This document shows positions 4,359-10,109 of a DNA stretch of 64,000 bases, one piece after another. The stretch spans positions 1 through 64,000 of the IMG/VR virus record IMGVR_UViG_3300040801_001224; one strand, written 5' to 3'. Below the pieces are notes generated by a model. That model did no database searches. It was not told where the DNA came from and saw nothing but the letters and a program-made list of their open reading frames with translations. A program made the position numbers and the translations under genes. Every line of letters starts with the position of its first letter. Position 1 is the first letter of the stretch.

Positions 4359-4388
4359 TATCCTGTGGGATTATCCTGTGGGATTATC
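4359..4388. repeat. 13-bp tandem repeat TATCCTGTGGGAT x2 plus a partial copy
   Basis: Copies at 4359-4371 and 4372-4384, partial at 4385-4388. Confidence 0.8.
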
Positions 4389-4391
4389 TTA

Positions 4392-4420
4392 TTGACAAAA
4401 AAATTTGGTTGTGTTATAAT
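4392..4420 (+). promoter_or_regulatory. sigma70-type promoter, probably leaderless
   Basis: TTGACA-N17-TATAAT; ATG at 4427. Confidence 0.85.
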
Positions 4421-4426
4421 GTCTTT

Positions 4427-4768
4427 ATGGATGATTCAAATAAATTAATTTATGAGATAGATAATTTACAATGGTCGCCGTATGGATCCATACGACCTAT
4501 TGGTCATGATGGCGATTATAATAATAAGCGTTATGTATTCAATGGTGTTCGTCATATTATACGGGAAGTATTTAGTGAGCAAGGTTATGAAGTTGGTGAA
4601 ATCATTATACGGGAAATTGATACGAGTTTTAAGACCCAGTTCATAATATACCTGGAGAGTGCCGAAGACCAGTTTGCTTGGATCATGACAGATACTGATG
4701 TCATTAGTGAAAGAATAGATGATGAAGTCGAATCTTTTCTTGACATGATGGCCCTAAAGAGTATATAA
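4427..4768 (+). CDS. hypothetical protein, family A
   Basis: LESAEDQFAWIMT; the track start at 4340 runs through the promoter. Confidence 0.75.
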   Translation: MDDSNKLIYEIDNLQWSPYGSIRPIGHDGDYNNKRYVFNGVRHIIREVFSEQGYEVGEIIIREIDTSFKTQFIIYLESAEDQFAWIMTDTDVISERIDDEVESFLDMMALKSI

Positions 4769-4775
4769 TATACTT

Positions 4776-4856
4776 GTTCAGTTGTTTTTAAATTGAACTC
4801 CTTTTTTATTGGAACGAATTTTACCCCCAGTGTGAAAATGCCGGGGGTATTTTTTT
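4776..4856 (+). ncRNA. candidate sRNA 1 (hairpin, anti-SD CTCCTT, terminator)
   Basis: TTGACA 4740 / TATAAT 4764; stem GTTCAGTT/AATTGAAC; no ORF; intrinsic terminator. Confidence 0.55.
4822..4856 (+). terminator. intrinsic terminator
   Basis: TACCCCC...GGGGGTA followed by T7. Confidence 0.85.
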
Positions 4857-5011
4857 CAAGGACTTAGGGTCATTACTTATGTAATACTTTCAAGGACTTA
4901 GGCTCGTTGGAAACTCTATTAAAATCAAGGGCTTAGGCTCATCTCTTTCTTCAATGAAATCAAGGGTTTAGGTTCACAGTTACCTCAGAATAAAATCAAG
5001 GGTTTAGGGTC
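4852..5011. repeat. array of five ~20-bp repeats (core TCAAGGRYTTAGGNTC) with unique 14-16 bp spacers
   Basis: Cores start at 4856, 4890, 4925, 4960, 4996; partial inverted copy at 5037-5044. Confidence 0.9.
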
Positions 5012-5151
5012 GGTACCAGGAATGGTTCCTTAAAGTGAGCCTAAGTTGTACCGGTCCGTCGGAGTTCCGGTCTAGATCATTCAGGCAACCGGGGTGTTTG
5101 TCTCGTCCCACCCCCCGGGACCTCCTCAGCGTTATTCCTAACTATACCACT

Positions 5152-5180
5152 ATTATAGCGAATTGGCTGGTCAATGTCAA
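5152..5180 (-). promoter_or_regulatory. reverse-strand sigma70 promoter pointing into the repeat array
   Basis: Minus strand TTGACA-N17-TATAAT followed by AGTGGTATAGTTAGGAA. Confidence 0.85.
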
Positions 5181-5276
5181 GAAAAGATATAAAAAGATAT
5201 GTCTAGATATGCCTGGACCATAATAGTAATTCTGGTTTTCCAATGATAAATAAAAGTACAGGGGGGGATATATAGT

Positions 5277-5867: not shown

Positions 5868-6302
5868 TCATTTAATAATGAACTTAGGGCGTTTAGATTT
5901 CTCTCCAGGCGCCCGTATGTAATACTTATCGGGACGTTTTCCATATGTTTCGGTAAGCTTAGGACGGTCTTTAACTACAGTATTCTGTATATAGTCTTTA
6001 GATAATAAAACTTTCTCCATTATAACTGAGCCATACTTACCACCGGTCTTTAAGTTATATGTGTCTGGACGCAACACATAGTATTCGTCTACATAATACT
6101 CTTCACGCTCTTCAGCAGTTTCCCGATCAGTAAATACTTCTAGTATACGTTTAATAAAATATGGTCTATCATTGTTATAAGCCCATGTAACAAATGTCCC
6201 GCTACCCATATAGTCATCATTCTCTGGGTCTACTGCTGAGCGGACGCCGATGTATTCCATGTTTGTTTTAGTGTTTATTAGTTTATAAATATAATGTTTC
6301 AT
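5868..6302 (-). CDS. GIY-YIG (Seg-like) homing endonuclease
   Basis: HYIYKLIN...EYIGVR...YMGSG...YNLKTGG; start MKHYIYK. Confidence 0.85.
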   Translation of the reverse strand: MKHYIYKLINTKTNMEYIGVRSAVDPENDDYMGSGTFVTWAYNNDRPYFIKRILEVFTDRETAEEREEYYVDEYYVLRPDTYNLKTGGKYGSVIMEKVLLSKDYIQNTVVKDRPKLTETYGKRPDKYYIRAPGEKSKRPKFIIK

Positions 6303-6380
6303 AATAATACTTATCATATGTACGATCAGTTATGTAGAGTGAACGGTTGACTTCCGGTCTACCATTTGCTATAATGTGTT

Positions 6381-10020: not shown

Positions 10021-10109
10021 CTAAGTTACTGATTCCATTGACCTTTCATTTGTTGACATCCCCCGACCACTTTGCTATAATACACAGTATAAACAGTTAG
10101 GAGAGTAAG

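What the first reader, a model, noticed from the sequence alone, without database searches (positions are those of the whole stretch)
4852..5048. Five-unit repeat-spacer array with a 34-36 bp period between convergent non-coding transcripts
Seen: core TCAAGG(A/G)(C/T)TTAGG(G/C/T)TC at 4856, 4890, 4925, 4960 and 4996, with unique 14-16 bp spacers (the first, ATTACTTATGTAAT, is palindromic) and an inverted half-copy GAGCCTAAG at 5037. The reverse complement CTAAGTCCTTGA resembles the promoter head TAAGTGGTTGA. A related single copy, CTAAGTTACTGATT, sits right after the terminator of the other sRNA candidate (10021). Inference: origin iterons, a protein-binding decoy array, recombination sites, or a processed small-RNA array transcribed from the 5180 promoter.
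Basis: partly seen in the sequence, partly recalled or inferred. Interest (0 to 1): 0.65.

Follow-up and report, generated by a model that had tools for sequence, protein, structure and literature searches.

The report
Conserved five-site repeat array in jumbo phage
A unique row of five evenly spaced, about 20-base recognition sites sits between two head-on early promoters of an uncultivated 328-kb phage; selection keeps it in the few known relatives, and it most likely is a docking platform for a DNA-bending protein, with its role (replication start or RNA decoy) still open.

Summary
The array is real. Five copies of TCAAGGRYTTAGGNTC lie at 4856, 4890, 4925, 4960 and 4996, all on the + strand, and nowhere else in the 328,096-bp circularly assembled jumbo phage genome. 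Two metagenome relatives (L089, L101) also carry five units. Their cores are about 88% conserved and their spacers about 53% (p = 7e-6). The 35-bp period is kept, and at least one unit has been gained and another lost while the count stayed at five.

The array lies in a conserved module:
- a perfect sigma-70 promoter P(+) 4740-4769, a short terminated sRNA, then the array;
- a GC-rich palindromic block (5021-5092) that holds an inverted partial unit;
- a 5' hairpin, then a perfect promoter P(-) 5180-5152.

Units 3-5 match the IHF core consensus WATCAANNNNTTR perfectly in all three variants. The period equals the 34-bp IHF site size.

My best reading (about 0.4) is a DNA-level array of protein-binding sites of architectural, IHF type. 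It would mark a unique cis site, possibly a transcription-activated origin like T4 oriE. The main rival (about 0.25) is that the repeats work inside the ~320-nt P(-) RNA as a multivalent decoy. CRISPR-like, ToxI-like and CsrB-like readings each fail defining features. No RNA data exist, so the function is inferred.

The parts
4740..4769 (+). P(+): perfect sigma-70-type promoter (TTGACA, 18 nt, TATAAT) inside the 3' end of the upstream gene; the transcript starts at about 4776
   Evidence: 12 of 12 matches. It is 90-93% identical in L089 and L101.
4776..4856 (+). Short + strand sRNA candidate. It has a 5' hairpin (4776-4783 / 4791-4798), a single-stranded CUCCUU stretch, a terminator stem 4824-4847 and a T-run 4850-4856 whose last T is the first base of unit 1.
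   Evidence: Sequence read. The hairpin stem is conserved while an 11-nt insertion sits in the loop in relatives; the terminator stem is kept (and perfect) in the relatives. Identity is 97% over 4770-4802. There is no Rfam match above threshold.
4852..4871 (+). Unit 1 (core 4856-4871, TTTT extension); one mismatch to WATCAANNNNTTR (TTTCAA)
4886..4905 (+). Unit 2 (core 4890-4905, ACTT extension); one mismatch to the IHF core consensus
4921..4940 (+). Unit 3 (core 4925-4940); perfect WATCAANNNNTTR at 4923-4935
4956..4975 (+). Unit 4 (core 4960-4975); perfect WATCAANNNNTTR at 4958-4970; orthologous to unit 3 of L089 and L101
4992..5011 (+). Unit 5 (core 4996-5011); perfect WATCAANNNNTTR at 4994-5006
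5021..5092 (.). Conserved GC-rich block, an imperfect palindrome centred on ACCGG...CCGGT. It holds an inverted partial unit (5037-5046), whose N position also varies in relatives, and a second WAGG-type element on the - strand.
   Evidence: 83-89% identical to relatives, while neighbouring non-coding DNA is 33-65%. Inverted repeats I3-I5. Among the most stable 0.4-6% of 60-bp windows in the genome. No reading frame with a start codon is shared by the three variants (read).
5089..5118 (-). 5' hairpin of the P(-) transcript: the sequence has diverged (33% identity) but a hairpin is kept at the same place, with G-C to C-G flips
   Evidence: 3 pairs changed on both sides; only two independent lineages, so the support is weak.
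5152..5180 (-). P(-): perfect sigma-70-type promoter (TTGACA 5180-5175, 17 nt, TATAAT 5157-5152). The transcript starts at about 5145 and runs through the block and the array to the hairpin at 4847-4824, about 320 nt.
   Evidence: A perfect promoter sits at the same place in L089 and L101. It is one of only four consensus promoters on the - strand in 328 kb.

Best explanation
The five units are binding sites on double-stranded DNA for one sequence-specific, probably DNA-bending protein, one site per ~35 bp. The best candidate is the host's integration host factor (IHF) or a protein with similar site geometry. Together with the adjacent GC-rich palindromic block, which carries a sixth, inverted partial site, the bound array would form a compact nucleoprotein landmark. 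This landmark exists once per genome, and two strong early promoters fire into it from both sides. The most plausible use is as a genome-level cis element switched on by early transcription: a replication origin of the T4 oriE kind (early promoter plus evenly spaced direct repeats), perhaps primed or opened by the G-rich P(-) transcript.

Shown: the array is non-random, unique and under purifying selection on cores, spacing and number. The promoters, block and hairpin are conserved with it.

Inferred: that the ligand is a protein on DNA, that it is IHF-like, and that the role is replication.
For: 1. Uniqueness. There are 5 units in 328 kb and no near-copies. It is the only non-coding multi-copy array in the genome. 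This fits a one-per-genome cis site.

2. Selection. Cores are 88/100 identical against 26/49 for spacers between the window and L089 (Fisher p = 7e-6). About 13 of 16 core positions are (near-)invariant across 15 units. Positions 7-8 vary only by transitions and position 14 varies freely. A 13-position specificity spread over 16-20 bp is the size of a DNA operator.

3. Spacing. Seven of eight spacings are 34-36 bp, although the spacers are about 45% diverged and the flanking non-coding DNA is full of 2-11-nt indels.

4. Number. It stays at five although window unit 4 with its spacer is orthologous to unit 3 of the relatives (15 of 20 spacer bases, identical core). So units were gained and lost.

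5. IHF match. Units 3-5 match WATCAANNNNTTR perfectly in all three variants, and units 1-2 miss it by one base. The conserved A/T just 5' of TCAA is part of that consensus. Only 25 such 13-mers exist in the genome (about 34 expected), and the array is their only cluster. The canonical IHF site is 34 bp (PMC1874591), which equals the period.

6. Inverted copy. The partial unit in the block shows the same pattern of constraint, with the same free N position. An inverted site is read the same way on duplex DNA but not on one RNA strand.

7. Known parallel. T4 oriE is an early promoter plus evenly spaced direct repeats, and T4 oriF and oriG are a promoter plus a downstream element that forms an R-loop (PMC3016281). 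This phage has T4-type structural and replication genes.

8. G-rich transcript start. The first 60-70 nt of the P(-) RNA are G-rich in both lineages despite 33% identity (G 23 against C 13; G 30 against C 12).
Against: - Positions outside the IHF consensus are also invariant (the GG after TCAA and the GG after TTA). IHF does not explain them, and no clear 5' A-tract is present.
- The host is unknown, so it may have no IHF. The phage encodes no HU/IHF homologue.
- 35 bp is 3.3 helical turns, unlike classical iterons at 11 or 22 bp.
- The array is not a markedly unstable DNA stretch (75th-83rd percentile).
- There are no DnaA boxes and no recognisable initiator gene. The one conserved neighbour has no known fold or family.
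- The array is 139-230 kb from the terminase, helicase and polymerase genes.
- The locus looks like a dedicated transcription unit (promoter, stabilising 5' hairpin, array, terminal hairpin). That is just what an RNA product would need.
- Only two independent lineages are available.
- No tandem IHF-consensus pairs exist in PA5oct, Serratia phage BF or a 364-kb IMG/VR relative.
Confidence: 0.4

Rival explanations
1. The repeats act in RNA. The ~320-nt early transcript from P(-) carries five single-stranded copies of GAnCCUAAryCCUUGA(U/A)n behind a structured, conserved 5' domain. It works as a multivalent decoy or sponge for a host or phage RNA-binding protein, or for a complementary small RNA.
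For: - The transcription-unit architecture is coherent and conserved: a perfect promoter, a 5' hairpin kept by compensatory change, the conserved block, the array and a terminal hairpin.
- The variants at positions 7-8 (AC, GC, GT) are all wobble-compatible with one partner sequence.
- The array lies in the early host-takeover region, where counter-defence functions usually sit.
- Differences between L089 and L101 are concentrated in the array and block: 18 of 25 fall in 171 nt. That would fit an arms race.
- The units fold weakly, so they would be accessible.
Against: - Known sponge RNAs repeat 4-8-nt motifs, not 13 fixed positions.
- No partner sequence exists in the phage.
- The terminal hairpin has a poor U-tract in the - direction.
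- The inverted partial unit has the same constraint pattern, which is hard to explain on one RNA strand.
- Conservation of spacing is not needed for a sponge.
- No RNA run holds the locus.
Confidence: 0.25
2. The array is an orphan type III antitoxin-like array (a 'pseudo-ToxI'). The P(-) RNA would be cut into ~35-nt units that neutralise a host ToxN-type abortive-infection nuclease.
For: - ToxIN-family antitoxin monomers are 34-36 nt, repeated 2.8-5.5 times, and lie between a promoter and a terminator (PMC5086642). The period (34-36), the number (5) and the order on the - strand (promoter, repeats, hairpin) all match.
- Phage TE escapes ToxIN by expanding such repeats (PMC3475682, PMC5086642).
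- Unit turnover and a hyper-divergent patch are seen here.
Against: - Type III antitoxin units are conserved over their whole length because the whole unit folds and contacts the toxin. Here 15 of 35 nt are free within one array and no common unit fold exists.
- No cognate array with this core was found in 241 million metagenome records or 185,579 prokaryote genomes. Apart from the phage relative L089, the hits were simple or telomere-like repeats.
- There is no toxN gene in the phage, although the control genomes were silent for that family, and a decoy would not need one.
Confidence: 0.06
3. The array is a centromere-like partition site or a packaging (pac) recognition site bound by a phage protein.
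For: It is a unique array of direct repeats plus one inverted copy. This recalls sopC (12 repeats of 43 bp) and lambda cosB (R sites with an IHF site, one R site inverted); both comparisons are from general knowledge. It occurs once per genome.
Against: The terminase large subunit gene is 139 kb away, and pac sites usually lie in or beside the small terminase gene. No ParA/ParB-like or TubR-like gene was seen among the neighbours. Lytic jumbo phages of this clade are not known to need partition.
Confidence: 0.1
4. The array is a neutral leftover of tandem duplication, or decayed promoter -35 regions, with no function of its own.
For: On the - strand the units resemble the upstream plus -35 part of the phage's early promoters. 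Tandem duplication by itself gives an even period.
Against: The cores are conserved far better than the spacers (p = 7e-6). The spacers have diverged to about 50%, so the array is old. Number and spacing are kept through unit turnover in a lineage where the flanking non-coding DNA is scrambled. The units lack a -10 element and the GTGG/CCAC feature of the real promoters.
Confidence: 0.05
5. The array is a CRISPR-like mini-array or RNA anti-CRISPR.
For: Only the repeat-and-unique-spacer look.
Against: The repeat is 16-20 nt and the spacer 14-19 nt, both far below CRISPR sizes. The spacers in relatives are homologous with point changes, not replaced. The spacers match nothing in the genome. There is no Rfam or CRISPR-repeat match.
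Confidence: 0.02

Closest known systems
[quoted passage not shown]
   Same: A T4-superfamily phage. A host-type early promoter fires into a unique cluster of evenly spaced direct repeats. The repeats are conserved in syntenic regions of close relatives. The role of the repeats is undefined even in T4 (PMC3016281).
   Different: The units are 20 nt at a 35-bp period rather than 12-nt repeats. Here there are two convergent promoters, a conserved GC-rich palindromic block and a small convergent sRNA. No repEA or repEB relative was looked for. No replication data exist.
IHF binding sites (WATCAANNNNTTR, 34-bp site), as used singly at lambda attP and cos, oriC, and the pSC101 and R6K origins
   Same: Three units match the core consensus perfectly and two miss it by one base, in all three variants. 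The period equals the site size. The sites lie in a likely cis-acting regulatory locus.
   Different: Five contiguous head-to-tail sites are not a described arrangement, as far as I know. Extra invariant G pairs are not part of the IHF consensus. No 5' A-tract. Host and binding are untested.
Plasmid and phage iteron origins and centromeres (R6K gamma, P1 oriR, lambda ori, F sopC)
   Same: Four to twelve direct repeats of 17-43 bp bound by one protein, unique in the replicon.
   Different: No adjacent initiator or partition gene can be recognised. The spacing is out of helical phase. No DnaA boxes. The spacers are not conserved.
Type III toxin-antitoxin RNA antitoxins (ToxI, antiQ) and the phage TE pseudo-ToxI
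   Same: A 34-36-nt period, about 3-5.5 units, the order promoter, repeats, terminator, and a known use by phages as decoys.
   Different: Only 20 of 35 nt are conserved per unit. No common fold, no toxin gene, and no cognate host array were found.

Membership tests
IHF binding site | Core consensus WATCAANNNNTTR | tested here: met
   Perfect in units 3-5 of the window, L089 and L101; one mismatch (T for A at position 2) in units 1-2. These are the only clustered matches in 328 kb.
IHF binding site | Site size of about 34 bp, so adjacent sites must be at least 34 bp apart | tested here: met
   The period is 34/35/35/36 in the window. In relatives units 2-5 are 35 bp apart, but units 1-2 are only 24 bp apart, so those two could not both be filled (PMC1874591).
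IHF binding site | [quoted passage not shown] | tested here: not met
   The A run lies directly against TCAA, not about 9 bp upstream. The 5' halves are variable spacers.
IHF binding site | IHF is present in the infected cell and binds the DNA | not testable with these tools
   The host is unknown (microbial-mat metagenome). The phage has no PF00216 gene.
Iteron-type replication origin | Three or more direct repeats of about 17-22 bp, unique in the replicon | tested here: met
   Five units of about 20 bp, unique.
Iteron-type replication origin | Repeats spaced in helical phase (about 11 or 22 bp) | tested here: not met
   The spacing is 35 bp, or 3.3 turns.
Iteron-type replication origin | Adjacent A+T-rich unwinding element | tested here: inconclusive
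   The array itself is at the 75th-83rd percentile of instability. The least stable stretches are 4761-4820 (98.7th) and 5151-5240 (95th-96th), on both flanks.
Iteron-type replication origin | Cognate initiator gene next to the iterons; DnaA boxes | tested here: not met
   The neighbours have no Pfam or PHROG match to Rep proteins. The structure model of the conserved neighbour is unusable (pLDDT 52). Only one-mismatch DnaA-like 9-mers are present.
T4 oriE-like origin | Early (host sigma-70) promoter beside evenly spaced direct repeats, conserved in relatives | tested here: met
   definition from PMC3016281.
T4 oriE-like origin | Replication starts there | not testable with these tools
   Only assembled contigs at about 5x depth from DNA runs are available. 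GC skew follows the direction of transcription and gives no origin signal.
CRISPR array / RNA anti-CRISPR | Repeats of about 23-47 nt and spacers of about 21-72 nt of foreign origin | tested here: not met
   Repeat 16-20 nt, spacers 14-19 nt. The spacers are homologous between relatives and match nothing else.
Type III antitoxin RNA (ToxI family) | Tandem units of 34-36 nt between a promoter and a terminator | tested here: met
   On the - strand: P(-), five units of 34-36 nt, then the hairpin 4847-4824 (PMC5086642).
Type III antitoxin RNA (ToxI family) | Units conserved over their full length, with a common fold | tested here: not met
   15 of 35 nt differ freely between units of one array. 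The unit folds are weak and inconsistent.
Type III antitoxin RNA (ToxI family) | A toxN-type gene downstream, or a cognate host array that it mimics | tested here: not met
   No - strand ORF follows the hairpin. The PF13958 search was negative, but the controls were silent. No cognate array was found in the metagenome or genome collections.
CsrB/RsmZ-type protein sponge RNA | Many GGA motifs, mostly in hairpin loops, on the transcribed strand before the terminator | tested here: not met
   GGA is present in only 2 of 5 window units, and on the + strand, where the array lies after the sRNA terminator.

The most novel reading that the evidence does not exclude
The array is the working part of an abundant early phage RNA. 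The P(-) transcript would be a new kind of multivalent RNA decoy: five accessible 16-20-nt sites on a structured scaffold that soak up a host defence nuclease, an RNA-binding regulator or a small RNA. The sharply bounded hyper-divergent patch between two near-identical relatives would be the trace of an arms race.
Probability: 0.2. Interest if true: 0.85.

Novelty: new variant of a known kind. Interest (0 to 1): 0.55.

Why it matters
Almost nothing is known about the cis-acting DNA elements (origins, packaging sites, architectural sites) or the non-coding RNAs of jumbo phages of the PA5oct and Rak2 supergroup.

This locus is compact (about 450 bp) and conserved. It has a clear, testable anatomy: two head-on consensus promoters, a small sRNA, five evenly spaced recognition sites and a palindromic block.

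- If the sites bind IHF or a phage protein, it would be a rare example of a contiguous five-site bending array and a candidate origin for a clade that has no mapped origin.
- If the repeats act in RNA, it would be a new class of phage decoy RNA.

Either way the fragment can be synthesised and tested in vitro without cultivating the phage.

Tried and rejected
- DNA searches of the locus against phage and plasmid collections found no match.
- Four scans of IMG/VR with array, block and sRNA patterns found no relatives; a fifth, looser three-unit pattern gave one hit in a giant-virus MAG, which I did not inspect.
- The metagenome scan gave one true relative (L089) among 11 hits. The other 10 are degenerate TTTAGGG-type simple repeats.
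- The prokaryote genome scan gave 31 hits, all simple tandem repeats.
- The upstream protein has a single relative cluster in 5.8 billion and in 1.84 billion proteins. The 88-aa protein further upstream has none. No Pfam or PHROG family matched. The Atlas search gave nothing usable. The AF2 model has pLDDT 52, so no fold search was run.
- Rfam gave nothing at gathering thresholds and only chance-level hits at E up to 10.
- No RNA run holds the locus. The four DNA runs (one study) gave identical contigs and no variants. Four sister-sample contigs are identical over the locus.
- A small protein on the - strand was rejected. The window has a GTG-started 38-codon frame and the relatives an ATG-started 25-codon frame, in different registers over the conserved block.
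- A Rho-utilisation site was rejected. The array RNA is not C-rich over G (C 32 against G 27 in the window; C 26 against G 33 in L089).
- A tetraloop hairpin inside the core (positions 5-8 with 13-16) was rejected: only 7 of 15 units can pair at position 7 with 14.
- Pairing of the inverted copy with a given unit shows no covariation.
- The 15-nt perfect inverted repeat covering both -35 regions is not conserved in L089, so it is not a mobile-element end.
- Host inference through the phage's UDP-glucose dehydrogenase gene found nothing.
- GC skew gives no origin signal.

Full report
**Setting.** The window is the first 64 kb of a 328,096-bp virus record from IMG/VR. Its ends overlap by only 23 bases, so it is a circular assembly with an arbitrary start. 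It comes from microbial-mat metagenomes.

The baseplate wedge protein is 42% identical to that of Pseudomonas phage PA5oct and 37-40% to those of Atu_ph07, Serratia BF and other Rak2-like jumbo phages. The best IMG/VR relative is 63% identical on a 46-kb fragment that does not reach this region. So this is an uncultivated, deeply branching jumbo myovirus.

The genome carries about 90 perfect TTGAC(A/T)-17/18-TATAAT promoters, nearly all on the + strand. The array lies in the early region of small + strand genes.

**The observation.**
- Five copies of TCAAGGRYTTAGGNTC lie at 4856, 4890, 4925, 4960 and 4996 on the + strand.
- Shuffles of the window give 0.39 matches at up to two mismatches, and none of 100 shuffles gives five.
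- In the whole genome there is no sixth copy at up to one mismatch.
- Three-mismatch hits outside the array (15) are not above the expectation of about 19 in all.
- Tandem Repeats Finder and a spaced-k-mer scan show that this is the only non-coding multi-copy array in 328 kb. The other long-period arrays have periods divisible by three and lie in open frames.
- The 'related copy' at 10021 lacks four positions that never vary in the units, so it is not a unit.

**Anatomy of the locus.**

On the + strand, a perfect promoter (4740-4769) lies in the last codons of the upstream gene. About 80 nt follow: a hairpin, a single-stranded CUCCUU stretch and a strong terminator. The last T of the terminator's T-run is the first base of unit 1.

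On the - strand, a second perfect promoter (5180-5152) is one of only four consensus promoters on that strand. From about 5145 it would transcribe, in order:
- a G-rich leader with a hairpin (5118-5089);
- a 72-nt GC-rich block (5092-5021);
- the five units;
- the back of the terminator hairpin.

That makes about 320 nt. No Rfam family matches either strand.

**Relatives.** One metagenome scan found a true relative, L089. A look-up through the upstream protein found a second, L101. Four contigs from sister samples are identical to the window.

L089 and L101 both have five units, both promoters, the sRNA, the block and a hairpin at the same place. Identity between the window and L089 by region:

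| Region | Identity |
|---|---|
| sRNA 5' hairpin | 97% |
| 20-nt units | 88% |
| Block | 89% |
| Spacers | 53% |
| 5' hairpin of the P(-) RNA | 33% |
| Non-coding DNA beyond P(-) | 46% |

Cores against spacers give Fisher p = 7e-6.

Across the 15 units:
- T1 C2 A3 A4, G6, T9 T10 A11 G12 G13 and T15 are invariant; G5 (T in one unit of the relatives) and C16 (T in one unit) nearly so.
- Positions 7-8 are AC, GC or GT, that is, transitions only.
- Position 14 takes all four bases.

Spacing is 34-36 bp in seven of eight intervals. The exception is a 10-nt deletion in spacer 1 of the relatives, which removes the palindrome.

Window unit 4 with its spacer matches unit 3 of the relatives (identical core in L101, 15 of 20 spacer bases) better than its positional partner does. 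So units have been gained and lost while the count stayed at five.

The sequence of the P(-) hairpin is replaced, but a hairpin remains, with G-C to C-G flips. That is weak evidence, because there are only two independent lineages.

No reading frame with a start codon is shared over the block, so the block is not coding.

**A local hot spot.** L089 and L101 differ at 25 places over 792 aligned columns. Eighteen of these lie within 171 nt, running from the end of unit 1 to the first half of the block. That is about 10% divergence against about 1% elsewhere. The changes fall on the free positions of the cores, on spacer 4 and on the block. Either a diverged copy of this module was recombined in, or the module evolves faster. 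T4 origins are known recombination hot spots (reference list of PMC3016281). An arms race on an RNA decoy would give the same picture.

**What the units look like.** With their conserved A/T extension, units 3-5 read (A/T)ATCAA-NNNN-TTA. This is a perfect match to the IHF core consensus WATCAANNNNTTR, in the window and in both relatives. Units 1-2 differ by one base.

The genome has only 25 such 13-mers on both strands (about 34 expected), and the array is the only place where they cluster. The canonical IHF site is 34 bp, of which only 15-17 are specified, in the 3' half (PMC1874591). That matches a 34-36-bp period with free 5' spacers.

I came to this match after trying several other motifs from memory (CsrA, HutP, TRAP, DnaA, omega heptads), so its weight must be discounted. 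The units also have invariant G pairs that IHF does not require, and no 5' A-tract.

The phage has no HU/IHF gene, and the host is unknown. PA5oct, Serratia BF and a 364-kb IMG/VR relative have no tandem IHF-consensus pairs.

**DNA or RNA?**

For DNA:
- A specificity of 13 positions over 16-20 bp is operator-sized.
- Spacing is conserved, although indels are common in all flanking non-coding DNA.
- The inverted partial unit in the block keeps the same fixed and free positions, which only makes sense for a reader of duplex DNA.
- The element occurs once per genome.

For RNA:
- The - strand forms a tidy transcription unit with a stabilising 5' hairpin.
- It lies in the early region.
- The hot spot would fit an arms race.
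- The position 7-8 variants are all wobble-compatible with one partner.

The + strand RNA is unlikely to be the active form, because the array lies behind a strong terminator and runs into P(-).

**Readings that fail.**
- Rho-utilisation site: fails on composition.
- CsrB-like sponge: fails because GGA is not conserved.
- CRISPR-like array: fails on sizes and on spacer homology.
- ToxI-like antitoxin decoy: it shares the 34-36-nt period, the number of units and the promoter-repeats-terminator order (PMC5086642). It fails the full-length unit conservation and the common fold. No cognate host array was found.

**Function.** For an origin I can show:
- a host-type early promoter firing into evenly spaced direct repeats, as at T4 oriE, whose repeats are also of undefined role (PMC3016281);
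- a G-rich start of the transcript in both lineages;
- very low-stability DNA on both flanks.

Against an origin:
- the array itself is not especially easy to melt;
- there are no DnaA boxes and no recognisable initiator;
- the spacing is out of helical phase.

The terminase gene is 139 kb away, which weakens a packaging-site reading. GC skew follows the direction of transcription and says nothing about replication. No RNA run and no read-level data exist.

**Verdict.** The array is a real, unique element maintained by selection. It belongs to a conserved ~450-bp module.

| Reading | Confidence |
|---|---|
| DNA-level array of architectural (IHF-type) protein sites marking a cis element, possibly an origin | about 0.4 |
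| Functional repeats within the P(-) RNA | about 0.25 |
| Partition or packaging site | about 0.1 |
| ToxI-like decoy | about 0.06 |
| No function | about 0.05 |
| CRISPR-like | about 0.02 |

The rest is unassigned. It is best filed as a new variant of known repeat-array cis elements. The decisive tests (footprinting, pull-down, RNA end mapping on the cloned fragment) need no cultivated phage.

Noticed in passing
whole genome; in the window e.g. 7015, 7926, 8588, 10330, 11325, 12216, 12935, 13366, 13920, 15346, 16069, 17866, 18872, 19840, 20358, 21568: About 90 perfect TTGAC(A/T)-17/18-TATAAT promoters, nearly all on the + strand. About 20 in the 7-22 kb early region carry AAGTGG just 5' of the -35 and CCACTT in the spacer. 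This inverted repeat embraces the -35 and looks like an operator or hairpin for early shut-off.
   Followed up: partly
window 4392-4430, and many promoters genome-wide (e.g. 6347, 125172, 139706, 177551, 178284, 269403, 277726, 321535): Many consensus promoters have an ATG 6-7 nt after the -10, which means leaderless mRNAs. Among them is the gene upstream of the array: its real start is M30 at 4427, judged from the 115-aa relative. This may be a clue to the host.
   Followed up: partly
window 4776-4856 (+): A small RNA candidate with a conserved 5' hairpin (in relatives an 11-nt insertion falls in the loop), a single-stranded CUCCUU anti-Shine-Dalgarno-like stretch and a strong terminator. It is 97% conserved over its 5' part. 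Its weak, sub-threshold Rfam hits are all to CU-seed sRNAs.
   Followed up: partly
L089 (reverse complement) 186-356, against L101: 18 of the 25 differences between two otherwise ~99% identical contigs fall in 171 nt covering the array and the first half of the block. This is a sharply bounded recombination or hyper-divergence patch.
   Followed up: partly
window 4732-4746 and 5174-5188: A 15-nt perfect inverted repeat (ATCTTTTCTTGACAT) covers the -35 of both convergent promoters. It is not conserved in L089, whose P(-) has the usual AAGTGG head, so it is probably a local gene conversion.
   Followed up: yes
window 4359-4388: A perfect 13-bp tandem repeat (TATCCTGTGGGAT, 2.3 copies) that also forms an 11-pair hairpin, just upstream of the P4392 promoter.
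   Followed up: no
window 5868-6317 (-): An HNH-type homing endonuclease gene (phrog_314, E = 1.5e-27) on the opposite strand, 0.8 kb from the array. It could be a source of local co-conversion.
   Followed up: no
Pseudomonas phage PA5oct NC_071039.1, 286,440-286,783: Non-coding repeats with a ~44-bp period (CTATAGTGTACAAATAATGAGTGATA-like units) at the right end of the record. The motif is unrelated, but this may be an analogous array in a distant relative.
   Followed up: no
G000 229,919-230,263: Five repeats of 69 bp, each starting CCATATTT. They lie in a 159-codon open frame on the - strand, so this is a 23-residue protein repeat, not a DNA element.
   Followed up: yes
L146 (Methanobrevibacter MAG NZ_CACXNW010000037.1) about 2200-2450: A perfect 41-bp tandem repeat whose unit contains AAAATCAAGGAATTAGGAATAC. 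It is a chance look-alike of the phage core, and the whole unit is identical between copies.
   Followed up: no
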